From: Dendrobates tinctorius
Lineage: Eukaryota
NCBI RefSeq assembly: GCF_039654945.1
Contig: NW_027361878.1
Location: 23,002,001 to 23,066,000 of the forward strand
Direction of reading: 5' to 3'
DNA length: 64,000 nucleotides
The notes beneath the pieces are model-generated. The model was not told where the DNA came from. It did not search any database and saw nothing but the letters and a program-made list of their open reading frames with translations. Made by a program: the position numbers and the translations under genes. Shown here piece by piece: positions 14,117-60,122 of the stretch (positions within the stretch are counted from its first letter, which is position 1; each line of letters opens with the position of its first letter).

Positions 14117-15675
14117 CGGTGGATATTTAGAAGAAGGCTGTAATGGGGGATATGAAGGAGGGGTCTGTTGGGTGATGGTGGGGTGGGGCAATGCTGGCAC
14201 CGGGATGAGCATGTCTTGTTTTAACAGCATTGGGTGAAAAATCTTTTTAAAGTGGCTTTCTTAAGTTTGAAAGTAATCCCATATCCATGGAAGTTTTCTC
14301 CAGCGATGGACTTTATGAATAAAACGTAACATTTATTGTATTATCATTATAAAAGCAAGGACAATGGCATACCACTTATACCCTGGAGGCAAAACCAACA
14401 CGTTTAGACAGCTAGGTCTTAGTCATTCTAGTCGCTGTGGGTCTGACCCTCTGAAATCCCCTGTGTGAATCATACATAGGTCAATCATACGCACTGCTGC
14501 GCCATTCATTCTAATGGGCGTGCCAAAGACCAGCCTTGGCATTGTTATAAAATAATGTAAATTCTGTCTCGCCGTACTTGGAGTTGCCTCGGGTACTTTC
14601 TGTGCTCACACCACCTCTTGGTGAGTCAGAATGTACACCTATACCTGGCATCGGCCCATGTACCCATGCTGCCAATCACCTGATGAACAAGAAAAAAGGC
14701 TCATGTATACCAGTATAAAAATCATCGGCAGCACATCCCCCATGTTAACAGGTGATGTGCTGCCGATGACAAGATACTGGACAGTATCTGGATTGTCTTA
14801 TCCATTGGTCTGTCCCCTCAGTTTGTGTGGCCCCGTCGAACTGGCCAGGAAATAAGCCCTGATGAGTTTTATATGGTAGATCGGCGCTTATTAATGGGCA
14901 TTTACGAAAACAGCGATCCCTCCTGGCTCCCCTGTACACATGCAGATCCAACCAAGTTTTTTAAAGTGCTGTCCCCAGCAGGACAAGTAATAACATTCTG
15001 ATCAGTGGGAGTCTGACTGCTTGGCCGTCTACTGATCTCGAGATCAGGGCTCTAGAATGCCCTCAAAGGAATGGAGTGTTGGCCACGCGTGCTGGAGAAA
15101 GCTGTGTGCTGCACTTTGCTGTCTCCACCAGTCCCATAAAGGAAAGGCGCAGAGGTTCTCATACACTTTCAGTTCTGTGCAGTGTGTGAGGAAATCTGCA
15201 AAAGAAAGTATTCAACCCCTTTAACCACTACCCCTTTCAAGTGCAACCTCCACCCCTCTGGTCAGGTCAACGCTAGCACGCATGAGAGCACCATATTCAC
15301 CACCTGTCCAGTCAAATGCTGCTGTAGGTGAGTGCACCACTCCTCCAACTATCTGTCCAGTCAAACACTGTTGGCCATGACCACATATGCAAGACACCAC
15401 ACCACCAGCCTCCTCCTCCAGTGAGGGTTCTCTGGTGGCGGACATGTGACCACAAGTATGCGATTTGCATACATGAGGCCACGTGCTGACTAGACGTGAG
15501 CATCTTCATTCAATGTAAGTGTATTGGACAAGGCTACTTCTAGTCAATGTGGCCTGAAGAATGCAAATCGCATACTTGCATTCTCATGTCTGCTCTCTCC
15601 TGGCATTGAAAAATCATCACCGTGTGCTATGAGGATTCCCAAATTTGCAGTTACATAGAGTAGCTGTCACAACTC

Positions 15676-26721: not shown

Positions 26722-28399
26722 TAGGGGACTATCACAGACTTGGCCCTCTCCTGGATCTCATCATACCTAAAGGTACTGTCACACTTAGCGATGTACCAGC
26801 GATCCGGACCAGCGATATGACGCGGTCAGGATCGCTGGTACATCGCTAAGTAGTCGCTAGTGAGCTGCCACACAGGCAGATCTCACCAGCGACATCGCTG
26901 GGGACGGGGATCGCTACTTACCTGTCACACCAGGCGATCCTGCGTCCTCCCGCCTGGCTCCACGCGTCGCTCGTCGTCACAGCAGGAAGCGCCGCAGGAA
27001 GCTGACGACAAGAAACAGTCCTGAACGTTCTCGCGCGATCAGCGATAACCAGCGGGGGAGCCGGTCGTAGGTAAGTATCAGACACAGAGCTATCGCTAGC
27101 AATATCGCTATAACGTCACTAGTTATAGCGATATTGCTAGCGATATCTCTTAGTGTGACATGCCCTTAACAGACCGGACATTCAGCGTCTCCCACTCACA
27201 CACCACCTCCTCACCTCGCCCCCTATCTGTCGGAGTCCCACAAGGTTCAGTCCTAGGGCCCCTGCTGTTCTCTATTTACACCTTTGGCCTGGGACAGCTC
27301 ATAGAATCTCATGGCTTTCAGTATCATCTTTATGCTGATGACACACAGATCTACATCTCTGGACCAGATATCACCTCCCTACTAACCAGAATCCCTCAAT
27401 GTCTGTCCACTATTTCATCCTTCTTCTCCGCTAGATTTCTGAAACTCAACATGGACAAAACAGAATTCATCATCTTTCCCCCATCTCACGTGACCCCCCC
27501 TACGAACCTATCCATTACAGTAAATGACTGCCCACTCTCCCCAGTCCCACAAGCTCGCTTCCTCGGAGTAATCCTTGACGCTGATCTCTCCTTCAAACCA
27601 CATATCCAAACCCTTTCCACTTCCTGCCGACTTCAACTCAAAAATATTTCACGAATCCGTTCATTCCTCACCCAAGAATCTGCAAAAACCCTAGTCCATG
27701 CCCTCATCATCTCTCGCCTTGACTACTGCAACCTCATGCTCTGTGGCCTCCCATCAAACACTCTCGCACCCCTCCAATCTATTCTAAACTCTGCTGCCCG
27801 ACTAATCCACCTGTCCCCCCGCTATTCCCCAGCTTCTCCCCTCTGTCAATCCCTTCACTGGCTCCCAATTGCCCAGAGACTCCATTACAAAACCCTAACC
27901 ATGACATACAAAGCCATCCACAACTTGTCTCCTCCATACATCTGTGACCTCGTCTCCCGATACTTTCCCGCACGCAACCTCCGATCCTCACAAGATCTCC
28001 TTCTCTACTCCCCTCTTATCTCCTCTTCCCACAATCGCATACAAGATTTCTTCCGCGCATCCCCTCTACTCTGGAACTCTCTACCACAACATATCAGACT
28101 CTCGCCTACCATCGAAACCTTCAAAAAGAGCCTGAAGACCCACCTCTTCCGACAAGCCTATAACCTGCAGTAACCACCGATCGACCAAACGGCTGCACGA
28201 CCAGCTCTACCCTCGCCTACTGTATTATCACCCATCCCTTGAAGATTGTGAGCCCTCGCGGGCAGGGTCCTCTCTCCTCCTGTACCAGTCATGACTTGAA
28301 TTGTTTAAGATTATTGTACTTGTTTTTATGTATACCGCTCCTCACATGTAAAGCGCCATGGAATAAATGGCGCTATAACAATAAATAATAATAATAATA
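26722..28399 (+). mobile_element. 5'-truncated L2 LINE (RT C-terminal half), interrupted by a MITE
   Basis: ORF 27160-28173 with [48 protein letters not shown]; (AAT)n tail at ~28380-28399; removing the MITE restores ..SWISSYLTDRTF. Confidence 0.93.
26771..27166. mobile_element. Harbinger/PIF-like MITE inserted in L2
   Basis: TIRs aggtactgtcacact / agtgtgacatgccct; TAA TSD (26768-26770, 27167-27169). Confidence 0.85.
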
Positions 28400-31436: not shown

Positions 31437-34400
31437 TAAATTCTTTTTTTTTGTAAATTCAAAAAAACAATAAAAATACACATATTTAGTATCGCCGAGT
31501 CCGAAACAACCCGCCCTATAAAACTGTCCCACTAGTTAACCCCTTTAGTGAACTCCTTCAAGAAAAAAAAACCAAGGCAAAAAACAAATGCTTTATCATC
31601 ATACCGCCGAACAAAAAGTGCAATAACGCGCGATCAAAAAGACGTATATAAATAAACATGGTACCTCTGAAAACGTCATCTTGTCCCGCAAAAAACGAGC
31701 TGTGATACAGCATCATCAGCATAAAACAAAAAAAGTTATAGCTCGCAGAATAAAGCGATGAAAAAATAATTATTTTTTATATAAAATTGTTTTTATTGTA
31801 TAAAAGCGCCAAAACATAAAAAATGATATAAATGAGGTATCGCTGTAACCGTACTGACCCGAAGAATAAAACTGCTTTATCAATTTTACCGCACACGGAA
31901 CGGTATAAAAGCCCCTCCCAAAAGAAATTCATGAAACGCTGGTTTTTGTTCATTCTGCGCCCCAAAAATCAGAATAAAATCAATCAAAAATGTCACGTGC
32001 CCGAAAATGGTACCAATAAAAACGTCATCTCGTCCCGCAAAAAATAAGACCTCACATGACTCTGTGGGTCAAAATCTGTAAAAATTATAGCTCTCAAAAT
32101 ATGGTGATGCAAAAACTATTTTTACAATAAAAAGCGTCTTTTAGCCTATGACAGCTGCCAAACATAAAAACCACCATAAATAGTAACTCAAACCCCCCGT
32201 TATCACCCCCTTAGTTAGGGAAAAATAATAAAATTTAAAAAATGAATTTATTTTCATTTTCCCGTTAGGGTTAGGGTTAGGGATGAGATTAGGGTTAGGG
32301 GTGTGTTGGGGTTAGGGTTGGAGTTAGAATTGAGGGATTTCCACTGTTTAGGCACAGCAGGGGCTCTCCAAATGCAACATGGCGTCTGATCTCAATTCCA
32401 GCCAATTCTATGTTGAAAAAGTGCTCCTTCCCTTCCAAGCTCTGCCACGCGCCCAAACTGTGGTTTACCCCCACATATGGGGTATCAGCGTACTCAGGAC
32501 AAATTGTACAACAACTGTTGGGGTCCAATTTCTCCTGTTACCCTTAGGAAAATAAAAAAATTGGGGGCAAAAATATCATTTTTGTGGAAAAAAATATGAT
32601 TTTGTTAATCTTTATGGCTCTATGTTGTAAACTTCTGTGATGCACTTGGGGGTTCAAAGTGGTCACCACACATGTAGATAAGTTCCTTGAGGGGGTCTAG
32701 TTTCCAAAATGAGGTCACTTATGGGGGGTTTCCACTGTTCTGGCACATCAGGGGCTCTCCAAACACGACATGGCGCCTGTGGAAACTGTTTGGGTAAGAA
32801 TACAAGGACAGAACAATGGAAAGGACACCATTGTAGGCATTTACTACAGGCCGCCTGTGCAAGCTGAAGATATGGATGAACTCTTTATGCATCAAATGGC
32901 CAAGTTCTCCAAAAAATATGACATAGTTGTCATGGGAGATTTCAGCTATCCAGACATTTGTTGGGAATCTCTCTCGGGCAAAACTAACAGGTCAAGGAAA
33001 TTCTTATCCTCTCTTGCTGACAACTTTATCTTCCAAAAGGTAAGGGAGAAAACAAGGGGAACTGCTACCTTGGATCTAATCCTTATAAACAGGGAGGAAA
33101 TGGTTGAGGAGGTAAAAGTGGCTGGGACCCTAGGAGGTAGCGACCATGCTATTTTAGAATTTTGGATAACTAGAGGAGGAAGACCTGTGAAGACTCAGAC
33201 GTCAAGGTTAGATTTCAGAAAGGCAGATTTTAAGGGATTCAGAAAGAGAATTGGAGGGATCCAATGGCTGGATATCCTTAAAGACAAAAATGTCCAGGAA
33301 GGATGGGAAATCTTGAAAAATGAAATTCTCAAAGCACAATTGTTAACAATTCCGACAAGAGGGAAGAATAGGAAGCATTTAAGGAAACCAGCATGGATGA
33401 ACACAGAACTTAAGCACATGCTAAAAAGGAAGAAAAAATGTTTATAAAATGGAAAGAGGGAGGCATATCTAAAGAAGAATATAATGCTGTCTGCAGAGCC
33501 TGCAGGGCACAAATCAGATTATTAAAGCTGACAATGAATTGAGGCTTGCAAGAGATGTCAAAAGCAATAATAAAGAATTTTGGGGATATGTCAAAAGTAA
33601 AAGAAAAGTCAAAGATGCTATAGGATTTTTACAGGATGAAAATGATGAAATGGTAAGACAGGATGTTGAGAAGGCCGAACTTTTAAATTCCTATTTTGCA
33701 TCTGTTTTCTCTCAGAAAGGAAATGTAACATCAATTGTTCTTCACTGTCCTATTAATGGAATAGAAGAATCCAGGATATCTATAAAGAGAAAGATAGTGA
33801 GGAAACACTTAGCTAACCTAAATGAATTCAAGTCTCCAGGTCCAGATGAATTACACCCCAGAGTTCTGAAGGAGATAGCAGAAGAAATTTTTGAACCCCT
33901 CCCCTCTCCATAATCTTTGAAAATTCTTGGAGAACAGGAGAAGTCCCAGAAGACTGGAGAAGAGCAAATGTTGTTCCTATCTTCAAAAAGGGGAAGAAGG
34001 TGGACCCAGGCAACTATAGGCCGGTGAGTCTGACTTCTATACCAGGAAAGATCTTTGAACAAATTATTAAACAACATGTATGTCAGTACCTGGATAAGAA
34101 TGAAGTGATTAAACAGAGTCAGCATGGGTTTGTAACTAATAAGTCATGTCAGACTAACTTAATTTCCTTCTATGATGGAATCACTGATTGGGTGGATCAA
34201 GGAAATGCTGTAGATATAGTATATCTTGACTTCAGCAAAGCATTTGACAAAGTATCTCATATAATCCTTATTGAAAAAATGACTAAGTATGGAATGGGCA
34301 AGGCAACTGTTAGGTGGATTCACAACTGGCTTAGTGATCGGACCCAAAGAGTGATCGTAAACAGCTGCACATCCTGTTGGAAGAATGTCTCAAGTGGGGC

Positions 34401-35820
34401 ACCACAGGGCTCTGTCCTGGGCCCTGTATTGTTCAACATCTTTATAAATGATTTAGATGAAGGAATTGAGGGTAAACTGATTAAATTTGCTGATGACACA
34501 AAGCTAGGAGGGATAGCTAATACTAGAGAAGAGAGAGAGAAGATTCAAAAAGATATAAATAAACTGGAGAAGTGGGCAGCAACTAACAGAATGGTTTTTA
34601 ACAGGGAAAAATGCAAAGTACTACATCTGGGCAATAAAAATGAAAAAAGCATATACAGAATGGGAGGAATAGGGCTAAGCAACAGCACATGTGAAAAAGA
34701 CTTGGGTATACTAATAGATCACAGACTGAATATGAGTCAACAGTGTGATGCAGCAGCAAAAAAGGCAAATGCAATTCTAGGATGTATTAACAGAAGCATA
34801 CAGTCTAGATCACGTGAAGTCATTATTTCCCTCTACTCCTCTTTGGTCAGACCTCATCTGGAATATTGTGTCCAGTTTCGGGCTCCACATTTTAAAAAAG
34901 ACATCAACAAACTGGAGCAAGTTCAGAAAAGAGCGACCAGAATGGTGACCGGTCTGCAAACCCTGTCTTATGAGGAAAGGTTGCAGGATTTGGAAATGTT
35001 TAGTTTGCAAAAGAGAAGACTGAGAGGAGACTTAATAGCTGTCTACAAATATCTAAAGGGCTGTCATAATGTAGAAGGATCAACTATATTCTCATTTGCA
35101 CAAGGAAAGACTAGAAGCAATGGGATGAAACTGAATGGGAGGAGACACAGATTAGATATTAGAAAAAACTTTTTGACAGAGTGATCAATGAGTGGAACAA
35201 GCTGCCACGAGAAGTGGTGAGTTCTCCTTCAATGGAAGTCTTCAAACAGAGGCTGGACAGACATCTGACTGGGATGATTTAGCGAATCCTGCTTTGAGCA
35301 GGGGGTTGGACCAGATGGCCCAGGAGGTCCCTTCCAACTCTATGATTCTATGATTCTATCTCAATTCCAGACAATTTTGCATCAAACGGCGTGCCTTCCC
35401 TTCCGAGCTCTGCCATGCACCCAAACAGTGGTTTACCCCCACATATGGGGTATCAGCATGCTCAAAACAAATTGCACAATAACTTTTGGGGTCCTGTTTC
35501 CCTTGGGAAAATAAAAATTGGGGGTGAAAAGATCATTTTTTTGGAAAAAATATCATTTTTTAATTGTACGGCTGTACGTTATAAACTTCTGTGAAGCCCT
35601 TGGGGGTTCAATGTTCTCACCCCCTATCTAGATAAGTTCCTTGGGGGGGTCTAGTTTCCAAAATGGTGTCACTTGTGGGGGGTTTCCACTGTTTAGGTAC
35701 ATCAGGGGCTCTCCAAACGTGACATGGCGTCCGATCTCAATTCCAGTTAATTTTGCATTGAAAAAGTCAAACGGCGCTCCTTCACTTCTGAGCTCTGCCA
35801 TGCGCCGAAACAGCGGTTTT
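31437..35820. mobile_element. Second, partial copy of the telomere-repeat/satellite-bearing piggyBac-derived family, interrupted by CR1
   Basis: 32190-32340 matches 6287-6500 (ccccccg.ttatcaccccc..ttagggttaggg); ~390-bp satellite units at 32340-32777 and 35360-35820. Confidence 0.7.
32778..35359 (+). mobile_element. 5'-truncated CR1 LINE; ORF2 (APE endonuclease + RT) broken by frameshifts
   Basis: ORFs 32770-33447 (VVMGDF.YPDICW, GSDH), 33539-33913 (KSPGPDELHPRVLKE) and 34000-35184 ([31 protein letters not shown]); 3' tail (ATTCTATG)n. Confidence 0.95.
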
Positions 35821-44360: not shown

Positions 44361-44559
44361 NNNNNNNNNNNNNNNNNNNNNNNNNNNNNNNNNNNNNNNN
44401 NNNNNNNNNNNNNNNNNNNNNNNNNNNNNNNNNNNNNNNNNNNNNNNNNNNNNNNNNNNNNNNNNNNNNNNNNNNNNNNNNNNNNNNNNNNNNNNNNNNN
44501 NNNNNNNNNNNNNNNNNNNNNNNNNNNNNNNNNNNNNNNNNNNNNNNNNNNNNNNNNNN
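44361..44559. other. Assembly gap (N run)
   Basis: ~200 N. Confidence 1.
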
Positions 44560-44934
44560 ATATATGCACACACAGAAAGCAAATATAGAGCCAGCACTCA
44601 AGGAGAACACTTTTTTTTCCACTTGTACCCTTTGAACGTTGCCAAGATTTTTTACTTTTTTCTACATCCAGAAGACTTTTGTCAGTTCTGCTCTAGGAGG
44701 AATTGCACCACGGACTGAAGATGGTATTGCTATTTTTATGTTTTCTATCTATTATCTATTTGTATATCTTCCTATCTATAGATCTATCCATGTATCTATC
44801 TATCTATCTATTTATCTATCATTTATCTATATAAAAATTAATCTATCTATCTATAGATCCATCTATCATCTATCAGTCTGTCTATCTATTATGTATCTAT
44901 CTATCTATCTATCTATCTATCTGTCTATCTATTA

Positions 44935-46246
44935 CACAGGTCAACGAAAAAAAAATTTTTTTCTGGTGTCCAAAATATTTTAATGAATTTGGGGTATTTT
45001 TGGGGTGCTGATTCTGAATATGTCATCAGTTTTGCCAGATTGGCTCAAGTTTTTGAGATTTTTGGTATCTTATTTATAGCACTTGTTGGTAAATGCGACG
45101 CATCATCTCATTAATTTCTTTGGATTAGTACTTGAACTGAGCAGTTCTCAATATAGTTTTGTGTTAATTAGTGTTCTAAAAGTTTGTTCATAGCTTGATT
45201 TTTGCACTAACTTTATGTTGTTGTCTGTTTTCCAGTGAAAAGCATGAACTCATCATGAAGAAGTTGTCTTAACGATCCAGACTCATTCTGTTACATTTGT
45301 GGTGAATATACACTGCCAAAACATAGAAGAAACATAACACACTTCGTAAAAAAAGTGTATTTTGCCTATTTTGGGGTTATGCTTGGGGACCAAGACAAGT
45401 TTTGGGCACCACACATAGTGTGCAAAGCATGTATCGAATTATTACGAAAATGGAGCAAAGGACAAAGAAAAAGCTTCAAATTTGGTGTTCCAATGGTGTG
45501 GAGAGAGCCAAAAAATCATCATGATGACTGTTATTTCTGTGCAGTGCAAGTGCAAGGATTCAATAAGCATAAGAAACGAAAATGGGAGTAACATGGAATC
45601 TGCAAGAAGGCCTGTCCCTCATTGTGAAGATGTGCCTGTACCTGTGTTTACCATAAATAACAGTCATCATGATGATTTTTTGGCTCTCTCCACACCATTG
45701 GAACACCAAATTTGAAGCTTTTTCTTTGTCCTTTGCTCCATTTTCGTAATAATTCGATACATGCTTTGCACACTATGTGTGGTGCCCAAAACTTGTCTTG
45801 GTCCCCAAGCATAACCCCAAAATAGGCAAAATACACTTTTTTTACGAAGTGTGTTATGTTTCTTCTATGTTTTGGCAGTGTATATTCACCACAAATGTAA
45901 CAGAATGAGTCTGGATCGTTAAGACAACTTCTTCATGATGAGTTCATGCTTTTCACTGGAAAACAGACAACAACATAAAGTTAGTGCAAAAATCAAGCTA
46001 TGAACAAACTTTTAGAACACTAATTAACACAAAACTATATTGAGAACTGCTCAGTTCAAGTACTAATCCAAAGAAATTAATGAGATGATGCGTCGCATTT
46101 ACCAACAAGTGCTATAAATAAGATACCAAAAATCTCAAAAACTTGAGCCAATCTGGCAAAACTGATGACATATTCAGAATCAGCACCCCAAAAATACCCT
46201 AAATTCGATGAAATATCTTTGGCACCAAAAATGCTGTTGACCAGTG
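44935..46246. mobile_element. Fold-back (palindromic) Chapaev3-like (CMC superfamily) DNA transposon derivative
   Basis: CAC...GTG termini (cacaggtcaac / gttgaccagtg), TTA TSD; both arms encode a Cys/His-rich transposase N-terminus CLNDPDSFCYICG..DQDKFWAPHIVCKAC..WREPKNHHDDCYF; arms 44992-45536 and 45655-46199. Confidence 0.8.
45244..45650 (+). pseudogene. Truncated transposase N-terminal zinc-finger (Chapa-like) domain
   Basis: ATG at 45244, premature TGA at codon 5, then ..SCLNDPDSFCYICGEY..DCYFC..KRKWE, frameshift to ESARRPVPHCEDVPVPVF. Confidence 0.75.
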
Positions 46247-47311
46247 TTATCTATCTATCTATCCATCGATCCATCCATCCATCTATCTATCTCTATATTT
46301 TGTGTATCTGCCAGTGACTCCCAAACTTATCACTGCAGGGAACCCCTGAAAATGTTTCCACTCTGGGACTGCTGGGGAACTCCTAATCCGCAATATTGGG
46401 CTCATTCTTGCCCATTGCTATGTTTCCAGACTACCTTATGTTTATATTTTGACGTATCTTTATGTTTGCAATTCCTATTGTAAAAGTGACCGGTTTGTGT
46501 TGCTGGGTTCTTGGTGACCCCAGATTAGGGCTCTAGGGGTTCCTAGTTGGGGAAACACTGATATCTGATGTGGATAATTTGCTTACACAAACAAAAAGTG
46601 GTGCCGATCGACCATAAGGTGTGGTCGACCTAGCGTCGCTTTTCCCTTTAGCATACAGTGATTCAGCCCGGTTTATTACGAAGCCTACCACACATTTGTC
46701 GTGATTCATCATTCTCTTTGCACCTTGAATAAAAGTTGTTATTTTTTACATTTATTATATCTTTTGTACCAAATTTATATAATTTCTTAGGTGTATTGGA
46801 CAATTTGGGTGTGGTTTTTATTATAAAGATGTTTAGGGCTAATTTATCATTTGAGACTTTTCAAAGCACCAGCAATGTTTCCACAGCTGCCCAGCAGTGC
46901 CCCCCTGGAATACAAGACTTTATGTGGGGTGGGAGAATATAGTTGAAGACTAACTTGAAAATGTTTAAGGTTAAATTCCCACGATAAGCTTTTCATTGAG
47001 TTTTTAATGTTGCAGATTTTCTGCACCATTTCTGCCCCCTTTTAGTAAAATAGGTTAATGGAATTTTTTTTTTCAAAAATACAAAGCGTAAAAAAAAAAA
47101 TCACAGAAAGAGTAATGAGCTATATAGATCACACTGCTATTATCCTGCAGGGATAAATCACGCACAGCATATTTAAATATACACCTTAGTGGCAAATATA
47201 TGGTTATTATGATCCTCCTGACTCCATTAGCGTATGCTCCCACAGACCGTCAGTACTGCAGATCTCCCGCAGTGATACCTGTAGTGACTTTTTTCCACTG
47301 CGGATCTCATT

Positions 47312-50634: not shown

Positions 50635-53277
50635 TCATTGCTAAGGAGGTGCTGGAGAGCCGCACTTATTTCTGCAGCACAATGACACGCTGCAGATCTT
50701 AAACCCGGAGCCCTTGTCAGCTGATGCTATGGATAATCATGTGCTGGAGATTCCGTAAACTCTTGTACATTTTCCTGACACTGTGAAACGCAGTAGGTTT
50801 TCCGCAAGTGAATATGTATAGCACAGAATCTGCTGCGTTTTCGCTACATGGAAGCACAACATTAGATTTGCTACTAACGTGTGTTTTTCAGTATTTTATG
50901 TATAGTTTATTCCCACGGGGAAGGATAATAGCAGCTTTTTTTTCTGCTTTATTATGAGCCCCGGGAACAAAGGATTTTATTTTACGCTAAACCCAAATAA
51001 TATCTTAACTATTATTATTGTGCAGTGATTACGGTCCGCTGCTTCCTGCTATCAGCCAGTCTGGGAGGTGAGGACTGCTGGGTTTATTTGCATTTTCAAT
51101 AGTTTTCTAGTTTTCATAGTTTTTTTATGTTGAAGGTAGACATAAGTCCATCAAGTTCAAATTCCTCATGAGATGGATACTAACTGCCCCATAATAGAGG
51201 AAAAATTCCTTCCCAAATCCACATGGGTCGCCCTCCCAGGGCTGTGGGGTACTCGGTACCGGGCCGGTCTCTCAGATGGGAATGTCACAGCAGCGGCGAC
51301 CCGGTCCGTGGCCCTGGGCGCCCAAGTAAAAAGGGAGATTGAACGGTGCAATGTAGTTGAAATGAATAGTTTGTGACGCCACCTGTGGTGTTCGGCAAGG
51401 GAGGTGTTAAGCCGACGCTGCATGCAGATCCTCTTGGACTGATGGTATGGCGCAGCAAAGATGTTATAGCTCCCCACAGGTGGAGCTGTAGTCCCAGGGC
51501 AGTGTACATGTAGAGGCCAAGGGAAGGCGTAGGTGAGGCAATGTCGAGCACCAAGATGTAGCAGTGCCGGGTGTGTTGGCGCAGGAATAAGTAGAGGACA
51601 CCAGAGCATGCAGTTCCAAAGCTTTACTCACAGTCTGTTGTACAAACAGGTGCCTGCCTCCGTGCCGTGTCCTCCGGGTCAGGGACTCAGTCAACCTCCA
51701 GGCCAGATGGAATACACCTTTCCAACACTCCGCCAACATGTGCCTTTCTGAACGTCTCCTCTTATAGCGGCTTTAGATGAAGTACTCCTAGTACTGAGTT
51801 ACACTGGAGTTCCTCCTGTCCGATGTTCCTCTGAACTCTACTTGTACGGCAGACAGTTGTAGCCTGCTTCGGGGACTCCTTGCTACTAAGTTCCGGCTCA
51901 CTATCCAGTTGCTGTTGTGCCCCCAAGTCTTGTGTGGGAATAAAGTGGTCGCTACTTGTATTCCTCTGGTGTCTGCTGCAGGACCATTAGTATCCATACA
52001 ACCTCGGGGACCGGGCCCCGGCCTTGCGCTTAGAACTTCTAGGAAGGGTTCTCCTCTAACCCACGTCCTCTGTTATCTTTAACTCTTCACGTTCCGTACT
52101 AATCCTTTCTTTCTATGGAGAATCAGGCTTTCAGTCTATGTTGCTCTCTCTCTTCCTTTCCCGTGCCAGCAGACCCAGGTCACTGGGATCTGCTGCAGCA
52201 CTTCCATCCATCTATCCCTCTCTCCGGGGATCTTCTCTCCTGCTCTCTAATCAACTGACTTCCAATCCTAAACTCTTCCCGCTCTTTGTAATGTAAACTA
52301 ACTCCACCCACCTCCCAGCACGTTTCGTGTTCCAAGCAGGGAGCCACCAATGGGTGTTTTGCTACACTCCAAGCAGGGAGCCGCAGAAGGTGCTGTGCTA
52401 CACTACTTTGTGGTGTGGGGAGCAGGTGTTGGAGCGTGGTTGGGAGTTTCCACCTTACCTGGATGGTGGGATAACACACCTCAGGAGGAGGTGCAGTACC
52501 TCTGTGGCGAATGAGCCTAAGGGGCGCCACATACCCCCCGTTAAACACAACACGTCCGCGGGCTGCAAGGCAAACAAAGTTGACAATACAGGAACATACA
52601 AAAATTTTTATATTGCATAATAAGCATGTCTTATACTAAACTTCCCAATGTGGGAGGCACTGTTTCTTGAATGTTACAAACCAGTTAACTGTCTATCTAT
52701 ATTTAAAGTTATGCTACCTAATCCAAAGTGCTATAGGAACAGATTCACTATCACTCGAGCAACACATTTGCTAGTGACACATTTCTTCTCCGTTTACCTT
52801 TCACATTTTGATTTAACTCTCACATCTTTATTCAAACTCTGTAACACAGTCACTGTATTTCTTTCTCTATTAGACCCTATAAAATCTGTCATTAATACTT
52901 TCACTACACACTATCATTGCCTAGCTTCTTATTCAAAAAATATTAAGCATTATGAATAAGTGCAAAGAGTAGACACTGGTCCGGCCATTATGTCTTGAAA
53001 TGTCCTTGTTCCGAGGTAGTACTTGTTCATGGGAAGGTTCCTATGTAAAACCAAGAGAGAGCACCTAAAGAGGTGCAAACTATTTACATTTACAGTTCTG
53101 GATCACTCAGCGTCCATGATCTCCACAGTTCAAGTGCAAAGGCTGCCAATGGAACTAGGCAACAACTGGATCAACAGATAACATAATCAAAAATAGAAGG
53201 ATCTTAGAAAAACTGAGAAAACTGGCACAATGGTGCAAATACCCTCCTGGGCAACAAAGTTAGTTTACTGTAAATTA

Positions 53278-54842
53278 TTAGTGGTGATCCCCTCCTGGGG
53301 TGAAAAACGAGTTGGCAGACCACAGGTACTTCTCCTCCCAAAGGGTGAAATTGGTGACCTCTTGTACTTTCGGCTGCGGGACTGGTACTGATGCAGCTTG
53401 GCTTATGGGGGCAGATACTCGCACAGCTTTGGTGATGGCTGTGGGTGGAGGAGTAGCAGGTTGCTTCTGCCGGTAACTCTCGATGAAATCCTCCGGGATA
53501 CAGTGTATATTTAGGGCATACCACCCCCTTAGCCCCTCATGCCGGGTGAAAGTCACGTAATCCCCTGGGTGTAGGTTCCGGCAGGGTGTCCCTTTTTCAG
53601 ATGGGACTCCACGCCTCTCCGGTTAAAGAACAGATCGGAGATAAACCCGAACCCCCGCTCATGGTTCGCATTGAGAACCTGGCCCCATCCTGCCGAATCC
53701 CGGGGACCATAATGACCAGCACAGGTTTTTTCTTTGCAGCCTAGGTCAGGGCCCAGCACAGACAACCTTGTCTGTTCCATCTCCCGCTGCTCGGCTGCCA
53801 GTTGTCGGATGGTCTCCTGGCAGTGGGCCTTCGTCACTTCCTCCTCTTCCCGGGACTGATCTCTGCCCACCCTAGCCCGTGGTACTATGGTTAGGGGTTC
53901 CGGTGTTCCCCCGGGGGACTTGTATCCCGGTCCCAGACCAAATCTAGCACGACCTGGCCAGCCGCTGCGACCACGGTACACCCCAAGGTCTTCCCAGGTG
54001 CAGGGACGCCAGACGTACCTGGAGCCTCCTGGCGGCACTCCGGTGCAGGTCGGAGGTAGCCGGCGGCAGCGGGGATATCCAACGGGATGGGCCGGTGAGG
54101 CGGCAGAGGCGCCGGCGGAGCAGATGGCGTCTCCAGGTCCACGGGGGGTCTCCGGTGGGATCTGCCCAGCTGCGTCATGTCCAGGCGGGAGCTTCTCTTC
54201 CTCCGCTTCGGCTCCCTTGGCACCATGGAGCGGCAGGGAGATGCCCACAGACGCTGCCGGGGTCATTGCAGCCATTTCAGGTGCTACAGGGTCTTCCTGG
54301 GGGAGATCCGGTGCAGCGGTGACAGGTACCGGTGTTGCGGGTACCGCAGGTGCAGGCCCCTCCTGGGCGCGCTGCCGGTTCAGTGTCCATAACGCTTCCT
54401 GCCTCAGTCGCAGGCGGCACGTCAGCTGGGCTATCTCGTCCTCCAGCTGTTGGCGGTTCATCCTGGAAGCCGGGTCAGAGCCTTCAGCCATGGCGCCGGG
54501 GAGATTCAGCTCAACCTCCTCGCTCTCCGCAGGCCTCTTCCCTTCTCCTTCCAATATGGCGTTCTGGCGTTCTTCTTCCTGCCTGAGCTCTTTTCCGGCC
54601 ACTGGCCTCTGCTCCTCCTTCTGGGGGCGGCATCTTCTTCCAACTGCTCCATAGCAGGCCAGTATATGAACCCCTCGGGGGGTGGGCCATGTTGCTGTCG
54701 CATAGAAGTTCAGACAGGGGAGGCCCAGGACAGTTTGCGGTCTTTTCTTAGGACCACCCATGCTGTCACGCCCTTCTTCACCGTGCCAGCAGCCATTTTT
54801 AGCGTTCATTTTACAGTCTATTAAATTGGGTCTTCTGCACAT
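53278..54842 (-). pseudogene. Element-encoded ORF (~520 aa once one frameshift is repaired): coiled-coil and Pro/Ala-rich N-terminus, C-terminal cold-shock-like domain
   Basis: ORF 53553-54848 joins ORF 53278-53556 via a 1-nt shift near 53582; the joined sequence GQVLNANHERGFGFISDLFFNRRGVESHLKKGHP-RNLHPGDYVTFTRHEGLRGWYALNI follows the CSD pattern. Confidence 0.7.
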
Positions 54843-54896
54843 TTTCAAAAACTTTGAGTCTTAGGCACACAGAACCCGATGGCATCGGGTCTCGTC

Positions 54897-54914: not shown

Positions 54915-56387
54915 AAATTGGGTCGCCCTCCCAGGGCTGTGGGGTACTCGGTACCGGGCCGGTCTCTCAGATGGGAATGTCACAGCAGCGGTGACCCGGT
55001 CCGTGGCCCTGGGCGCCCAAGTAAAAAGGGAGATTGAATGGTGCAATGTAGTTGAAATGAATAGTTTGTGACGCCACCTGTCGTGTTCGGCAAGGGAGGT
55101 GTTAAGCCGACGCTGCATGCAGATCCTCTGGGACTGATGGTATGGTGCAGCAAAGATGTTATAGCTCCCCACAGGTGGCGCTGTAGTCCCAGGGCAGTGT
55201 AGATGTAGAGGCCAAGGGAAGGCGTAGGTGAGGCAATGTCGAGCACCAAGATGTAGCAGTGCCGGGTGTGTTGGCGCAGGAATAAGTAGAGGACACCAGA
55301 ACATGCAGTTCCAAAGCTTTACTCACAGTCTGTTGTACAAACAGGTGCCTGCCTCCGTGCCGTGTCCTCCGGGTCAGGGACTCAGTCAACCTCCAGGCCA
55401 GATGGAATACTCCTTTCCAACACTCCGCCAACATGTGCCTTTCTGAACGTCTCCTCTTATAGCGCCTTTAGATGAAGTACTCCTGAGTTACACTGGAGTT
55501 CCTCCTGTCTGATGTTCCTATGAACTCTACTTGTACGGCAGACAGCTGTAGCCTGCTTCGGGGACTCCTTGCTACTAAGTCCCGGCTCACTATCCAGTTG
55601 CTGTTGTGCCCCCAAGTCTTGTGTGGGAATAAAGTGGTCACTACTTCTATTCCTCCGGTGTCTGCTGCAGGACCATTAGTATCCATACAACCTCGGGGAC
55701 CGGGCCACGGCCTTGCGCTTAGAACTTCTAGGAAGGGTTCTCCCATAACCCACGTCCTCTGTTATCTTTTACTCCTCACGTTCCGTACTAATCCTTTCTT
55801 TCTATGGAGAATCAGGCATTCAGTCTATGTTGCTCTCTCTCTTCCTTTCCCGTGCCAGCAGACCCAGGTCACTGGGATCTGCTGCAGCACTTCCATCCAT
55901 CTATCCCTCTCTCTGGGGATCTTCTTCTCTCCAGCTCTCTAATCAACTGACTTCCAATCCTAAACTCTTCCCGCTCTTTGTAATGTAAACAAACTCCACC
56001 CACCTCCCAGCACGTTTCGTGTTCCAAGCAGGCAAGCAGGGAGCCACCAATGGGTGCTTTGCTACACTCCAAGCAGGGAGCCGCCGAAGGTGCTTTGCTA
56101 CACTACTTTGTGGTGTGGGATGCAGGTGTTGGAGCGTGGTCAGGAGTCTCCACCTTACCTGGATGATGGGAAACCACACCTCAGGAGGAGGTGCAGTACC
56201 TCTGTGGCGACTGAGCCTCAGGGGCGCTACACACATATAGCAAATGCACCAGTTCCCGGGATCAATGCAACATCACAAAATCTAGTGTCCATAACCTGTG
56301 TTATTATATTTATCAAGGTAGGTATCCAAGCCCTTCTTGTAATTTTTTAGTGAATTAATCATTACAACAACATGTGGCGGAGCGTTC

Positions 56388-57642
56388 TATAGTCTTACTG
56401 CTCTTACAGTAAAGAATCCATATTCTTACTGCTCTTACAGTAAAGAATCCATAGTCTTACTGCGCTTACAGTAAAGTATCCATAGTCTTACTGCTCTTAG
56501 GCTAGTTTCGCATTTGCATACCTTGGAGCTGTGGAGGGATGCAGACGTCCTCCGAGAAGCTCAGCCCACGGCTGCACCTCCTCCGGTCAGCTCCTCCGTC
56601 GGCATGCGGCTGCATGCAGCCTGCGTACCCTATCTTTAGCATTCGGTACGCAGGCCGTGCCGCAGTATGCGGATGCCGCTGCATGCGTCGTTTTGACGGT
56701 GCGGTGACTGCACCAAAATGCAACATGTTGTGTTCGACGCAGGTCACCGCACCGTCAAAATGACGCATGTGGCGGCATCTGCATACTGCGGCACCGAGCT
56801 GACCAGAGGAGGTGCAGCTGTGGGCGGAGCTTCACAGAGGGCATTTGTATCCCTCCGCAGCTCCAAGGTACGCAAATGTGAAACTAGCCTCAGAGTAAGG
56901 AATCCATAGTCTTACCGCTCTTACAGTAAGGAATCCATAGTCTTACTGCTCTTACAGTAAAGAATCCATAGTTCTTCTACTCTTGCAATAAAGAATCCAT
57001 AGGTTTACTGCTCTTACAGTATACAATCCATGGTCTTACTGCTTTTACAGTAAAGAATCCATAGTCTTATTGCTCTTACAGTATAGAATCCATAGCTTTA
57101 CTGCTTACAGTAAAGCATTCATAGTCTTACTGCTCTTACAGTAAATAATTCATAGTCTTACTGCTCTTACAGTATAGAATCCATAGCTTTACTGCTTTTA
57201 CAGTAAAGAATTCATAGTCTTACTGCTCTTACAGTAAATAATTCAGAGTCTTACTGCTCTTACAGTATATAATCCATGGTCTTACTGCTCTTACAGTAAA
57301 TAATCCATAGTCTAACTGCTCTTACAGTAAAGAATCCATAGTCTTACTGCTCTTACAGTATAGAATCCATAGCTTTACTGCTTACAGTAAAGCATTCACA
57401 GTCTTACTGCTCTTACAGTAAATAATTCATAGTCTTACTGCTCTTACAGTATAGAATCCATAGCTTTACTGCTTTTACAGTAAAGAATTCATAGTCTTAC
57501 TGCTCTTACAGTAAATAATTCATAGTCTTACTGCTCTTACAGTAAAGAATTCATAGTCTTACTGCTCTTACAGTATATAATCCATGGTCTTACTGCTCTT
57601 ACAGTAAAGAATCCATAGCTTTACTGCTTACAGTAAAGAATC
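56388..57642. repeat. 31-bp minisatellite (~28 copies) derived from CR1 ORF2
   Basis: Unit catagtcttactgctcttacagtaaagaatc; its reverse complement encodes FFTVRAVRLW. Confidence 0.92.
56500..56889. mobile_element. Palindromic Harbinger-like MITE inside the minisatellite
   Basis: ggctagtttcgcatttgc / gcaaatgtgaaactagcc; tta/tca flanks. Confidence 0.85.
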
Positions 57643-60122
57643 ACTTTCTGTAATTATGATTAAACCATTTTCCTCTAGAAGTAGAGGATACCCCCTCACT
57701 GTCAAAGGCCTAGGTGTAAAAAAAATGATTATACAGATCTCTGTACTGTCCATTCATAAATTTGTACATTATAATAAGATCGCCCCTAAGCCTTTGCTTT
57801 CCCAAACTGAATAACCCCAAGTTTGATAACCTGTCTTGGTATTGCAGACCCCCCATTTCCTTTATAACATTGGTTGCTCTTCTCTGCACCCTCTCTAGCT
57901 CAGCCGTGTCCTTCTTATACACCAGTGACCAAAATTGTACGCAGTATCTAAGTGTGGCCGCACTAGTGACTTTTACAGAGGCCAAACTATGTTCTCGTCA
58001 TGAGCATCTAGGCCTCTTTTAATGCATCCCATTATTTTACTTGCCTTGGCAGCAGCCGCCTGACACTGATCACTAAAGTTGAGTTTGCCGTCCACTACGC
58101 CCACGTTTTTTTTACCCAGCATTTTACAATTTAGTACATAATTAGGGCTTGTGTAAATCAACGTTTAAATCGGACGAACGCTATCCATGGTTTTAACAGA
58201 TAGCACTCGTCGTACCCATGCTATTATATGGGGTTGTGCACATGTTTGATCTTTTTCCTCGGACCTCTCAGGCTAAAGAAAATCAGCAACGCAAGTCTAT
58301 GGGTCCGTGGAAAACATCGGACGGCACTCAGATGACATCCGAGTGCAGTCAGATTTTCACAGGCTGACATAATGGAGAAGGTGGAGAAACTCTAGTTTTC
58401 TCTCCACCTCTGATTAAACTCTGGTCAGAGTCTCATCAGTACCGTTTTTCTCGACGGACTTTTGTGCGACCCTACCCTTATACATAATATACTGACGAAA
58501 AGCCCAGAACTTAAGTATTATATTATCTAAGTACCAAGAATTTTTTTTCTATAAGTTGCGCTTTTGTAAGATTTCTACAACACGTTTAATATCCCTTTAA
58601 GAAAAACGTCCAATTGCAACATTTCACCAGGACCACACTGCGTAAATTGGCCACAACACACATTGATCCACTGAGCAGTGACCGCAGCACTGGCAGCATG
58701 AAGCTGATTCCACTGCAGCGCTAAGGCTGACGCCTCTCAGGGTTTTTGGCTGCCCATCCATCCCGTGAAGGGGTTAAGTAGCGAGGTTAAGTGGCAGGCA
58801 GAACTTGGCATGATCTCCATTGACTGTCATCCTCATTTAATGTGCGCTGGCCGGAGATTTCGAAGACACATTAACTGTTTCATGGCTAGAAATGGGTCAG
58901 CAGAGTGGGAGGGGTTAAGTGACACTGCAGGTCTGTGACAGTAAAGGAGCTTTAAGGAAGCTCCCCTGCATTTTGGCAAGCAGGGTGGGGTGATCATTAT
59001 GCAACGCTGCGTGGTGCTAGCAGGCAAGTGGCTGATGCTCTGCAGTCTATATGTTGTATAATGAGCTATCTGGCTTGGAAGGAAAGGGTTAAAGGATCCT
59101 AAGTTTTGCCATGAGACACTGCTGTATAAATGCATGGCTGGCAGACAGAGGGTAACTGCGGCTCCTGCCGGCGCAGAAGGGTTATTATAGTCAGGGGTCC
59201 GCAGGGAGTCAGATGATTATTATTATCGTCCTATAATCTCATTAGGTAGAATGCGAAGAATTGCACTTTAGTTTAGCGTGGCTCTTACGTGATGGAAGGG
59301 TTAATCAATTGCCTTCTCTACAAGTACAGGGTAAGCGAAGATCTTCAAGATCGGTAAGAAACGTTTGCTGGGCATTGGCGAAAAAATGGTTAATTGTGGC
59401 CATTGCATTATCTTGTTGCAGGTCCCCTGGTGGAGCAGGATCATCCCCCCTTAGGTCCTGTACACATTCTGCTTCTTTTTCCATCTCCTCCGCTCGCTTA
59501 TCGCAAATCTTTCTAGTCTCGAGCTTTATCTTCTTCCCCTTCTGTCTCAATGTCTACATCTTATTTCATCCTCTCACTCCCTCTTTTCCACGCCCATGCA
59601 GTGTGTGGATAGGAGGGAGTTCTCAGTGTGGGTATCACTGTCCTCCGGGCATCGGATACAAGAGGATGGGCTGCAGGCCCTGCTGCAGGGGGCTCCTACC
59701 TGCCTGAGTGTGCAGGTGTGTGACTGTCACATCATCCGATATTGGAGATCGCTGGCAGACGGCTCCGACACCTGCCCTCCTGGTAAGTGACACCAGCCGC
59801 TCTGCACTCACTTCTGACATCTCCGCTTCCTTATATATGTCCCGATGAATATATAGGTAGTCGGATATCAGTCATATATCTGTATAGGTTAAGAACTAAC
59901 CAATACACAATAAAAAAATGGAAAAATGTACAGGTGAAATAGAAATAACCAATATACATATGTACGGTATCTATCTATCTAGACATTTAATATACACATA
60001 AATAACCAACATACAATATAAACATACACAGGAGTAAAATAAAATACATAAATACACAAAATAAATAAATCTAAACATAAATAACCAACAAATGATATAA
60101 ACATATGCAACTGTAATATATA

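What the first reader, a model, noticed from the sequence alone, without database searches (positions are those of the whole stretch)
44935..46246. 1.3-kb fold-back Chapaev3-like transposon with 545-bp inverted arms
Seen in sequence: 44992-45536 is inverted at 45655-46199 with no mismatch that I could find by eye, around a 118-bp spacer. The outer ~50 bp differ between left and right, so a native right end seems retained, and the whole is flanked by TTA/TTA. Both arms carry the same premature TGA at codon 5, so the inversion post-dates inactivation or the arms are homogenised. Established knowledge: CAC..GTG termini, TWA TSD and this Cys/His N-terminal finger are typical of Chapaev3, whose finger is related to the RAG1 N-terminal region; the group is known for horizontal transfer among animals. 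Inference: a palindromic MITE formed by template switching. It could extrude a cruciform, yield long dsRNA (siRNA source) if transcribed, and may reflect horizontal transfer into this frog lineage.
Basis: partly seen in the sequence, partly recalled or inferred. Interest (0 to 1): 0.7.

Follow-up and report, generated by a model that had tools for sequence, protein, structure and literature searches.

The report
High-copy fold-back Chapaev3 transposon copy
This 1.3-kb insertion in a frog genome is one of roughly a thousand near-identical copies of a defective "jumping gene" made of two mirror-image copies of the front end of its parent's transposase gene; it is real and not an assembly error, but it is a known type of rearrangement and its suggested self-silencing role is untested.

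Summary
44992-45536 and 45655-46199 are perfect 545-bp inverted copies around a 118-bp spacer. The element (44935-46246) has CAC..GTG ends and a TTA duplication inside a TCTA microsatellite.

It is not an assembly artefact. Contigs from an independent sample of the same organism contain the arm as a 545-bp unitig, plus a unitig crossing the whole spacer and both junctions with no differences. In a deep DNA run, arm : spacer : single-copy flank depths are about 13,900 : 6,700 : 7.5. That implies roughly 900 copies, nearly all of them fold-back.

The coding fragment is the N-terminal "Chapa" zinc finger. It is colinear with ~560-aa transposases that carry D, D, C(2)C, LH, H(4)H and E motifs and a RAG1/Transib-like predicted fold. 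The ends, the TSD (A|TTA...TTA|T) and the left/right end asymmetry match full-length relatives, so the right 47 bp is a native right end.

It is best read as a non-autonomous Chapaev3 derivative, formed once by strand or template switching during repair and then mobilised in trans. Hairpin RNA, silencing and horizontal transfer remain untested.

The scan has already flagged the same 1312-bp element at five or more other loci of this genome.

The parts
44744..44931 (.). Left flank: (TCTA)n microsatellite, the insertion target
   Evidence: TRF array 44744-44932, period 4; the same repeat resumes on the right (46248-46292).
44932..44934 (.). Left copy of the 3-bp target-site duplication TTA (preceded by A at 44931)
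   Evidence: Matches the A|TWA...TWA|T rule given for Chapaev3 in PMC4079192.
44935..44991 (+). Native left terminus (57 bp): CACAGGTCAAC followed by a left-end-specific A9T7 tract
   Evidence: The same A/T-tract insertion is present in the left ends of the full-length relatives L003 and L002 and absent from all right ends.
44992..45536 (+). Left arm (545 bp): inner TIR, 5' untranslated region and the first ~97 codons of the transposase (Chapa finger)
   Evidence: perfect complement of 45655-46199. X6 unitig of exactly 44992-45536; X1 depth ~13,900.
45244..45591 (+). Broken N-terminal transposase ORF: ATG 45244, TGA at codon 5 (45256-45258), 110-aa finger 45259-45588, premature TAA 45589-45591 caused by a 5-bp deletion after 45588
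   Evidence: relatives carry A at 45256 and an extra TATCC after 45588, which keeps the frame into ...NMESARRPVPHCEDVPVPVFT.
45537..45654 (+). Spacer / hairpin loop (118 bp): native continuation of the coding region (end of the finger plus the start of the Pro-rich linker)
   Evidence: the X15 contig is colinear to 45654 and then continues with unrelated, native-looking sequence, so the breakpoint is 45654|45655. X1 depth ~6,700-6,900.
45655..46199 (-). Right arm (545 bp): inverted copy of 44992-45536. On the minus strand it carries the same broken ORF (mirror of 45244-45536 = 45655-45947), cut after ...DDCY
   Evidence: minus-strand ORF 45648-45836 with identical peptide. Junction-spanning unitigs in X6 (45507-45684) and X1 (45617-45683).
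46200..46246 (-). Native right terminus (47 bp): reverse complement CACTGGTCAACAG...TTTTGGTGCCAAAGAT, without the A/T tract
   Evidence: right-end-type sequence shared with the right ends of L003 and L002.
46247..46249 (.). Right copy of the TSD TTA (followed by T at 46250)
46250..46292 (.). Right flank: continuation of the (TATC)n microsatellite
   Evidence: array 46248-46292.

Best explanation
The stretch 44935-46246 is one copy of a young, high-copy, non-autonomous derivative of a Chapaev3-group cut-and-paste DNA transposon. The derivative consists of a native left end plus the first ~720 bp of the parent (5' region and the whole N-terminal Chapa zinc finger). At 45654|45655 this is joined to an inverted copy of positions 45536 back to 44992, and the element ends in a native right terminus. 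The most likely origin (inferred) is a single accident of double-strand-gap repair or replication. A nascent strand copying the element inward from the left end switched to the complementary strand 118 nt behind its tip and copied back outward. Its end, an inverted copy of the left TIR, then paired with the homologous right TIR, which closed the repair. Because both native termini were kept, transposase from autonomous relatives could mobilise the product. It then amplified to the order of 10^3 copies, each inserting with a TTA duplication; this copy landed in a TCTA microsatellite. It encodes nothing functional: there is a stop at codon 5, a 5-bp deletion and no catalytic core. Any transcript through it would fold into a 545-bp hairpin with a 118-nt loop that matches the 5' end of the parent's mRNA. 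Whether that happens or matters is not shown.
For: Structure.

Real and multi-copy:
- X6 is an independent sample and study of the same coded organism. It holds a unitig of exactly 44992-45536 and a 178-nt unitig 45507-45684 that crosses the whole spacer and both junctions with 0 differences.
- X1 depths are arm 13,905 / 13,593, spacer 6,934, junction unitig 45617-45683 6,703, left terminus 6,682 and unique flank 7.5. That gives an arm:spacer ratio of 2.07 and about 890 copies.
- Native-type copies with TATCC have a depth of only ~358.

Parent identity:
- The finger has 147 and 2,999 relatives.
- It is colinear with the N-termini of ~555-574-aa single-ORF proteins on ~2-2.7-kb contigs. These carry invariant D255, C328-x2-C331 and L376-H377, and near-invariant D309, H485-x4-H490 and E504/E507.
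- The AF2 model has pLDDT 90.7. Its best structural matches are the RAG1 core, HzTransib and BbRAGL, at E about 2e-7 to 6e-6.
- The Chapaev3 hallmarks in PMC4079192 are CAC..GTG, TWA between A and T, ~2.3 kb, ~556 aa, and C(2)C / LH / H(4)H. According to PMC4411706, the Chapa domain is restricted to Chapaev, Chapaev3 and TransibSU.

Native right end.

Breakpoint: the X15 RNA-library contig runs 44999-45654 and then continues with 21 unrelated letters.

Youth: apart from one position, this copy is identical to the X6 contigs over the arm, spacer and both termini.

Hairpin potential: MFE -1053.5 kcal/mol.

The scan's earlier notes list the same 1312-letter element at other loci.
Against: - No read or contig bridged flank to element at this particular locus. 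The microsatellite stopped the contigs, and the 184-bp left flank was not seen at all in X1. The locus-level placement therefore rests on the assembly, the matching TSD and the matching microsatellite.
- Copy number comes from k-mer depths of short unitigs and one 780-nt single-copy contig, so it is an order of magnitude and not a count.
- There is no usable microhomology at the 45654|45655 joint (at most 2 nt, offset), so the switch mechanism is not fingerprinted.
- Placement in Chapaev3 relative to the Repbase references could not be tested, because no Repbase is available here.
- Pfam's RAG1 N-terminal model (PF12560) did not hit the fragment directly. The RAG1 link rests on Atlas neighbours and on the literature.
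- No RNA evidence for the fold-back junction: the one RNA run laid down showed only the native form.
Confidence: 0.88

Rival explanations
1. Mobile Mu-killer-like silencer. The fold-back copies are transcribed, either from the parent's own 5' region present in both arms or by read-through. The 545-bp hairpins are processed into small RNAs that silence the autonomous Chapaev3 elements, so the family acts as a self-limiting brake. This reading adds a function to the best explanation and does not replace it.
For: [quoted passage not shown] The predicted RNA hairpin is extremely stable. The arms cover the 5' UTR and the first ~97 codons of the parent mRNA. Native-type copies are rare relative to fold-backs (depth ~358 vs ~6,700). 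This is compatible with a parent that has been shut down.
Against: No transcript with the fold-back junction was seen, and the only RNA-library contig laid down (X15) is the native form. No small-RNA data were available. A low autonomous to non-autonomous ratio is the normal end state of any DNA transposon family and needs no silencing by hairpins. In vertebrate germlines piRNAs, not hairpin siRNAs, are the main transposon defence (established knowledge).
Confidence: 0.15
2. Fold-back assembly artefact: a chimeric or mis-joined read near the gap created the inverted arm.
For: The palindrome lies 375 bp from an assembly gap. Perfect palindromes are a known artefact of some long-read libraries (established knowledge). 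Flank-to-element joints at this locus were not bridged by the contigs laid.
Against: The spacer with both junctions is present, letter for letter, in an independent sample and study (X6). It is also present at ~900 times single-copy depth in X1, with the 2:1 arm:spacer ratio expected of true fold-back copies. The structure ends in a proper native right terminus with a matching TSD in one continuous microsatellite, which an artefactual read fold-back would not produce. The scan notes list the same 1312-letter element at other loci.
Confidence: 0.02
3. Native long-TIR element: the 545-bp arms are the family's normal terminal inverted repeats, not a rearrangement.
For: Some DNA transposon families (Galileo and Foldback-like elements; PMC4168063) do have TIRs of hundreds of bp. 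In the X15 contig graph, the right-end unitig also joins the arm sequence without a visible branch.
Against: The arms contain the start of the transposase ORF, colinear with proteins whose genes continue for another ~430 codons. Full-length relatives have TIRs of only ~70-100 bp. A near-identical (98.6%) contig continues past 45654 with different, native-type sequence, where this element turns back. The outer 50 bp are diverged while the inner 545 bp are perfect, the opposite of what conserved functional TIRs show.
Confidence: 0.03
4. Source of a truncated DNA-binding repressor (KP-like). Family members without the codon-5 stop would encode a ~115-aa Chapa-finger-only peptide that competes with full transposase at the ends.
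For: A variant with A instead of T at 45256 (no stop) has substantial depth in X1 (4,010 against ~13,900 for the arm). The 5-bp deletion places a stop just after the finger. The product of such copies would therefore be the finger alone.
Against: This copy has the stop in both arms. No expression data exist. The DNA-binding role of the Chapa finger is itself unproven. Convergent identical ORFs in a hairpin are unlikely to be translated efficiently.
Confidence: 0.05

Closest known systems
Chapaev3 DNA transposons (Merrow, Garfield, Conan families; CMC / Transib-related) and their MITEs (GarfieldN1_BM, ConanN1/N2_AC), PMC4079192
   Same: CAC..GTG termini. 3-bp TWA duplication inserted between A and T. 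N-terminal Chapa zinc finger. Closest full-length relatives are ~2.3-2.7 kb with one ~556-574-aa ORF carrying C(2)C, LH and H(4)H. Non-autonomous derivatives that amplify to high copy number are known for this group.
   Different: The described Chapaev3 MITEs are simple internal-deletion derivatives under 600-800 bp. This one is 1,312 bp and is a fold-back of the left half (two copies of the transposase 5' end) with only the last 47 bp from the right end. The three poison-frog genome papers checked do not mention Chapaev or fold-back elements, and the Chapaev horizontal-transfer paper does not mention frogs. Subfamily placement is untested.
Maize Mu killer (Muk), PMC3440606
   Same: [quoted passage not shown] It is predicted to give a long hairpin RNA that matches the autonomous element's mRNA.
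   Different: Muk is a single rearranged locus, transcribed by read-through from a flanking gene, and its silencing activity is proven genetically. Here the hairpin unit is itself mobile with ~10^3 copies, sits in an animal genome, and has no evidence of transcription or silencing.
Foldback-like elements and Galileo (P superfamily) in Drosophila, PMC4168063
   Same: Most of the element consists of long inverted arms. [quoted passage not shown]
   Different: Galileo and FB arms are native, variable TIRs that often contain tandem sub-repeats. Here the arms are unique coding and 5' sequence with no internal tandem repeats. The native TIRs of relatives are short (~70-100 bp).
Fold-back Tc1 elements of the same genome (scan notes; 1,616 bp, 714-bp arms)
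   Same: Same 'two left halves' architecture, same genome, multi-copy, inserted as a unit.
   Different: Unrelated superfamily (Tc1/mariner). Known to me only from the scan's unchecked notes and not examined here.

Membership tests
Chapaev3 group of Chapaev/CMC (Transib-related) DNA transposons | Invariable 5'-CAC ... GTG-3' termini (PMC4079192) | tested here: met
   44935-44937 CAC and 46244-46246 GTG. The first 11-12 nt, CAC(A/T)GGTCAAC, are the same as in the full-length relatives L002 and L003.
Chapaev3 group of Chapaev/CMC (Transib-related) DNA transposons | 3-bp TWA target-site duplication, inserted between A (5') and T (3') (PMC4079192) | tested here: met
   A-TTA|element|TTA-T at 44931-44934 and 46247-46250. 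No empty site was available to prove the duplication.
Chapaev3 group of Chapaev/CMC (Transib-related) DNA transposons | N-terminal Chapa zinc-finger domain (RAG1 N-terminal-like), found only in Chapaev, Chapaev3 and TransibSU (PMC4411706) | tested here: met
   The 110-aa fragment aligns end to end with the N-termini of ~560-aa transposases and keeps all 27 invariant columns, including the Cys/His ligands. E-values go down to 6e-48. Atlas neighbours include PF12560 RAG1_imp_bd clusters. Pfam PF12560 itself gave no direct hit.
Chapaev3 group of Chapaev/CMC (Transib-related) DNA transposons | Parent transposase of ~556 aa with a DDE core and C(2)C, LH and H(4)H motifs | tested here: met
   Met in the closest full-length relatives only: D255, D309, C328xxC331, L376-H377, H485xxxxH490, E504/E507, with ORFs of 556-574 aa. 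The predicted fold is nearest to the RAG1 core, HzTransib and BbRAGL. The frog copy itself lacks the whole core, so it is a non-autonomous member.
Chapaev3 group of Chapaev/CMC (Transib-related) DNA transposons | Phylogenetic placement of the transposase inside the Chapaev3 clade relative to the Repbase references (Chapaev1/2 as outgroup) | not testable with these tools
The terminal motifs were not found in the supplementary files of PMC4079192.
MITE (miniature inverted-repeat transposable element) | Small size (generally <600-800 bp), no coding capacity, high copy number, homogeneous copies, TIRs and TSD | tested here: not met
   High copy number (~900), homogeneity, TIRs and TSD are met. Size is not met: 1,312 bp, with a recognisable though broken ORF fragment in each arm. 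'Non-autonomous fold-back derivative' is the more accurate label.
Foldback (FB)-type elements | Long native TIRs built of tandem sub-repeats that make up most of the element | tested here: not met
   The arms are long, but they are unique 5' and coding sequence. TRF finds no tandem array inside 44935-46246. Relatives have short TIRs.
Mu killer-type hairpin silencer | Inverted duplication of the transposase 5' part plus TIR | tested here: met
Mu killer-type hairpin silencer | Hairpin transcript processed to small RNAs that silence the autonomous element | not tested
The one RNA run laid down showed only the native form. No small-RNA data.

The most novel reading that the evidence does not exclude
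The fold-back family is a mobile, self-homogenising hairpin. Its two arms are kept identical by intra-element conversion, as suggested by a minority allele, C at 45340 with its mirror G at 45851, being present in both arms of this copy. Its ~10^3 copies jointly supply hairpin RNA against the 5' end of the Chapaev3 transposase mRNA. This would be an animal, multi-copy counterpart of maize Mu killer. With the unrelated fold-back Tc1 family noted in the same genome, it would point to a general route by which giant frog genomes tame DNA transposons.
Probability: 0.12. Interest if true: 0.65.

Novelty: new member of a known kind. Interest (0 to 1): 0.3.

Why it matters
It shows that a palindrome next to an assembly gap can be a genuine, abundant mobile element. 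This matters for assembling and annotating giant amphibian genomes. It adds frogs, and a fold-back architecture, to what is described for Chapaev3, the transposon group whose N-terminal finger is shared with RAG1. About a thousand near-identical 545-bp hairpin-forming loci are potential sites of replication stalling, ectopic recombination and dsRNA production. If the hairpin RNA were shown to feed small-RNA silencing, it would be a natural animal example of a transposon family generating its own mobile "killer" locus. As it stands it is a well-documented but ordinary product of faulty gap repair.

Tried and rejected
- Pfam on the 110-aa fragment gave only sub-threshold zinc-finger noise and no PF12560. 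PDB sequence searches with the fragment, P0202, P0181 and the profile A1 gave nothing meaningful. The RAG1/Transib relation appeared only at the structure level.
- P0202 (892 aa) is a chimeric gene call with the finger in the middle, so it was not used as a model of the parent.
- The JGI metagenome scan was run to look for a near-identical autonomous copy or a foreign host. It returned only relatives with <=69% aa and <=74% nt identity, confined to coding sequence. That gives neither a donor nor the frog's own autonomous element.
- The terminal motifs were searched in the supplements of the Chapaev horizontal-transfer paper: absent.
- A BLAST of the element against the rest of the window found no second copy.
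- I looked for microhomology at the 45654|45655 joint. There are at most 2 offset nucleotides, which is not informative.
- I considered using exact-protein look-ups to fetch other copies. This was rejected because the only callable ORFs start at GTG or are under 45 aa, and the word search showed no identical protein in the collection.
- The organisms of the sequencing runs are coded, so the RNA-library contig with the native form (X15, labelled 'metagenome') could not be used for or against horizontal transfer.
Full report
**Observation**

The region was read directly and checked by a repeat finder and by a script that walks outward from the symmetry centre.

- Positions 44992-45536 are the exact reverse complement of 45655-46199: 545 bp with no mismatch.
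- The first mismatches are at 44991 and 45537, which leaves a 118-bp spacer (45537-45654).
- With mismatches, the inverted repeat extends to 44960-45539 / 45652-46231 (580 nt, 98%).
- The element runs from CAC at 44935 to GTG at 46246, a length of 1,312 bp.
- It is flanked by TTA on both sides (44932-44934 and 46247-46249), with A before the left copy and T after the right copy.
- It interrupts one continuous TCTA/TATC microsatellite.
- The assembly gap is 44361-44559, 375 bp away.

**Is it an artefact?**

One search of public runs and one laying of contigs answer this for the structure.

X6 is a run from a different sample and study of the same coded organism. It contains:
- a unitig that is exactly the arm (44992-45536, 545 nt, one differing letter);
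- a 178-nt unitig, 45507-45684, that covers the whole spacer plus 30 nt of each arm with no difference.

Thirty nucleotides is the maximum overlap a k=31 graph gives. This falls one letter short of the tool's own 31-letter bridging rule. However, 31-mers joining spacer and inverted arm must exist in the reads for this unitig to be built.

X1 is a deep DNA run and possibly the source sample. Its unitig depths are:

| Segment | Depth |
|---|---|
| Arm | 13,905 and 13,593 |
| Arm-to-spacer unitig | 6,934 |
| Unitig across the fold-back joint (45617-45683) | 6,703 |
| Left-terminus-specific unitig | 6,682 |
| 780-nt single-copy contig in the right flank | 7.5 |

- Arm : junction is therefore 2.07 : 1, as expected if almost every copy of the arm sits in a fold-back.
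- Junction : single copy is about 890.
- Native-type sequence, marked by an extra TATCC after 45588, has a depth of only ~358.
- These are k-mer depths of short unitigs, so the copy number is an order of magnitude and not a count.

An assembly artefact cannot produce these results, so the family's structure is real and highly repeated.

What was not obtained is a contig bridging the flanks into the element at this locus. The microsatellite stopped all contigs, and the short left flank was absent from X1. The matching TSD and the continuous microsatellite argue for a clean insertion.

The scan's earlier notes record the same 1,312-letter element at five other loci and a folded-back Chapaev-type fragment in a hoxb7 intron of this genome. 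These were leads that agree with the depth data. I did not see those sequences.

**What the coding fragment is**

- In the left arm an ORF starts at ATG 45244 and has TGA at codon 5. It then reads 110 codons of a Cys/His-rich domain to a TAA at 45589.
- One frame over, the sequence continues as ...NMESARRPVPHCEDVPVPVFT up to the joint.
- Relatives in the reads carry A instead of T at 45256 (no stop) and five extra bases after 45588, which make the two frames one.
- Pfam and PDB sequence searches gave nothing significant.
- The word-based protein search found 147 unnamed relatives of 50-72% identity, mostly from arthropod-type sources. Atlas neighbours include RAG1 importin-binding (PF12560) clusters.
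- The exhaustive HMMER search found 2,999 relatives. The long ones (P0181, P0236, P0253) show that the domain is the N-terminus of ~560-aa proteins.
- A second word search with P0181 found 2,196 such proteins (E <= 1e-10), mostly alone on 2.0-2.7-kb contigs.
- In alignments the frog fragment is colinear with their first ~110 residues and keeps every invariant column.
- The relatives then continue into a core with D255, D309, C328-x2-C331, L376-H377, H485-x4-H490 and E504/E507.
- An AlphaFold model of P0181 (pLDDT 90.7) matches the RAG1 core, Helicoverpa Transib transposase and amphioxus RAG1-like best (E 2e-7 to 6e-6, TM ~0.45).

**Comparison with the literature**

- PMC4079192 gives the Chapaev3 hallmarks: CAC..GTG termini, a 3-bp TWA duplication inserted between A and T, ~2.3-kb elements, ~556-aa transposases, and C(2)C, LH and H(4)H motifs.
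- PMC4411706 names the N-terminal RAG1-like finger the Chapa domain. It states that the domain occurs only in Chapaev, Chapaev3 and TransibSU.
- All of these features are met here, either by the copy itself (termini, TSD, finger) or by its closest full-length relatives (core motifs, size, fold).
- Placement against the Repbase references could not be tested.

**The right end is native**

Full-length relatives from JGI metagenomes carry single ORFs of 556-574 aa. Their termini begin CAC(A/T)GG(T/C)CAACA.

Aligning the left and right ends of the frog element with those of L003 and L002 shows two things:
- a 10-bp A/T tract is present in all three left ends and absent from all three right ends;
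- the frog's right end shares the right-end motif (CACTGGTCAACAG ... TTTTGGTGCC...) with their right ends, most closely with L003.

The asymmetry between the ends is thus an old family trait. 46200-46246 is a true right terminus and not a diverged copy of the left one. The native TIRs of relatives are ~70-100 bp, so the 545-bp arms are not native TIRs.

**Breakpoints and origin**

- A contig from a poly-A RNA library labelled 'metagenome' (X15) is 98.6% identical over 44999-45654. It then continues with 21 unrelated letters that read on as Pro-rich linker.
- The inner breakpoint is therefore exactly 45654|45655. It lies in the disordered linker after the finger, which corresponds to the low-pLDDT segment 142-161 of the model.
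- The inverted copy begins at 45536, 118 nt behind the tip. There is no useful microhomology at the joint.
- The outer changeover from inverted-left sequence to right-end sequence lies at 46199|46200, inside the stretch where left and right TIRs are homologous.

The simplest model (an inference) has four steps:
1. A nascent strand copies inward from the left end during gap repair or replication.
2. It switches to the complementary strand.
3. It copies back out.
4. Its inverted left TIR anneals with the right TIR, which completes the repair.

This is the abortive or template-switching gap repair invoked for defective P, Galileo and Tc1/mariner derivatives (PMC4168063; PMC3814204). Because the joint is identical across ~10^3 copies, it happened once. 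The product was then mobilised in trans.

**Age and arm identity**

- This copy differs from the majority sequence of an independent individual at one arm position only, and at none in the spacer or termini. The family is therefore very young.
- Assuming ~1e-9 substitutions per site per year (an assumed rate, not measured here), this implies on the order of a million years or less.
- The one difference is informative. This copy has C at 45340 and the mirrored G at 45851. X6, organism B (X5) and X15 have G at 45340, and in X1 the C form makes up only roughly a quarter to two-fifths of arm depth.
- Likewise, the stop-free allele at 45256 has a depth of ~4,010. That is far more than the ~300-500 available for non-fold-back copies, so the T/A polymorphism exists among fold-back copies, yet this copy has T in both arms.
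- Symmetric minority alleles suggest either conversion between the arms or amplification from a master copy in which conversion had occurred.
- This rests on summed depths of overlapping unitigs and needs the copy-by-copy test described under next steps.

**Function**

- The copy encodes nothing usable.
- As RNA it would form a 545-bp stem with a 118-nt loop (MFE -1053.5 kcal/mol). The stem covers the parent's 5' UTR and first ~97 codons.
- This is the architecture of maize Mu killer (PMC3440606).
- No transcript of the fold-back form and no small RNAs were examined, so silencing is a hypothesis to which I give about 0.15.
- At the DNA level, the 118-bp spacer should make cruciform extrusion much less likely than for a spacer-less palindrome (established knowledge). 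Hairpin formation on single-stranded templates remains possible.

**Horizontal transfer**

Chapaev3 is documented to transfer horizontally among animals (PMC4079192). For this family I found no near-identical sequence outside runs of four coded organisms that hold the DNA, plus three coded RNA sources. The nearest sequences elsewhere are <=72% (protein) and <=74% (DNA) identical. The claim can be neither supported nor refuted here. The three poison-frog genome papers checked do not mention Chapaev, CMC or fold-back elements.

**Verdict**

The element is a new member (a frog fold-back family) of known kinds: Chapaev3 non-autonomous derivatives, and fold-back products of faulty repair. The scan has already met it repeatedly in this genome. 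Interest is modest unless the hairpin is shown to be processed into small RNAs or the arms are shown to be actively homogenised.

Noticed in passing
window 45064 and 46128-46132 (loose ends in run X1): Other contigs share only about the outer 130 bp of each end of the element and then continue with different, AT-rich internal sequence. This looks like a second non-autonomous family using the same Chapaev3 termini. The termini also show higher summed depth (~22,600) than the arms (~13,900).
   Followed up: no
window 45256 and 45340 (mirrors 45935 and 45851): Two polymorphisms within the fold-back family: T/A, which makes or removes the codon-5 stop, and C/G. Both are symmetric in the two arms of this copy, which hints at conversion between arms.
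   Followed up: partly
L003:13-92 and L003:2528-2607; L002:60-139 and L002:2323-2402: Full-length ~2.6-kb relatives from JGI metagenome contigs (ORFs of 567-573 aa) share the frog element's terminal 12 nt. They also share its left-only A/T tract and right-only motif, although the rest of the non-coding sequence is unalignable. Their contig flanks read TAA/TTA or TTA/AAA, perhaps because repeat contigs have chimeric flanks.
   Followed up: partly
L016:531-596: A perfect 33+33-nt spacer-less palindrome lies just upstream of the transposase ORF of a full-length relative.
   Followed up: no
window 32770-35184 (+) and 27160-28173 (+): LINE fragments: an endonuclease (PF14529/PF03372) followed by a reverse transcriptase (PF00078, E 7e-33), and a separate RT C-terminal fragment (E 9e-17).
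   Followed up: partly
window 20959-21486 (-): Tc1-type transposase N-terminal fragment (HTH_Tnp_Tc3_2, E 2e-14).
   Followed up: partly
window 51224-52534 and 54919-56234: Two direct copies of ~1.3 kb, 93-98% identical and ~3.7 kb apart. They could be an LTR-like pair or a local duplication. The 431-aa ORF between them (53556-54848, minus strand) has no Pfam hit.
   Followed up: partly
window 12366-14237 and 56355-57720: Two minisatellite arrays. The first gives long artefactual repeat ORFs (GEGCYGG...). The second has a 31-bp period.
   Followed up: no
same genome, other loci (scan notes): An unrelated Tc1 fold-back family (1,616 bp, 714-bp arms, 'two left halves') is noted repeatedly in the same genome. 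Two superfamilies with the same architecture may reflect a host repair bias or an amplification advantage of such hairpins.
   Followed up: no
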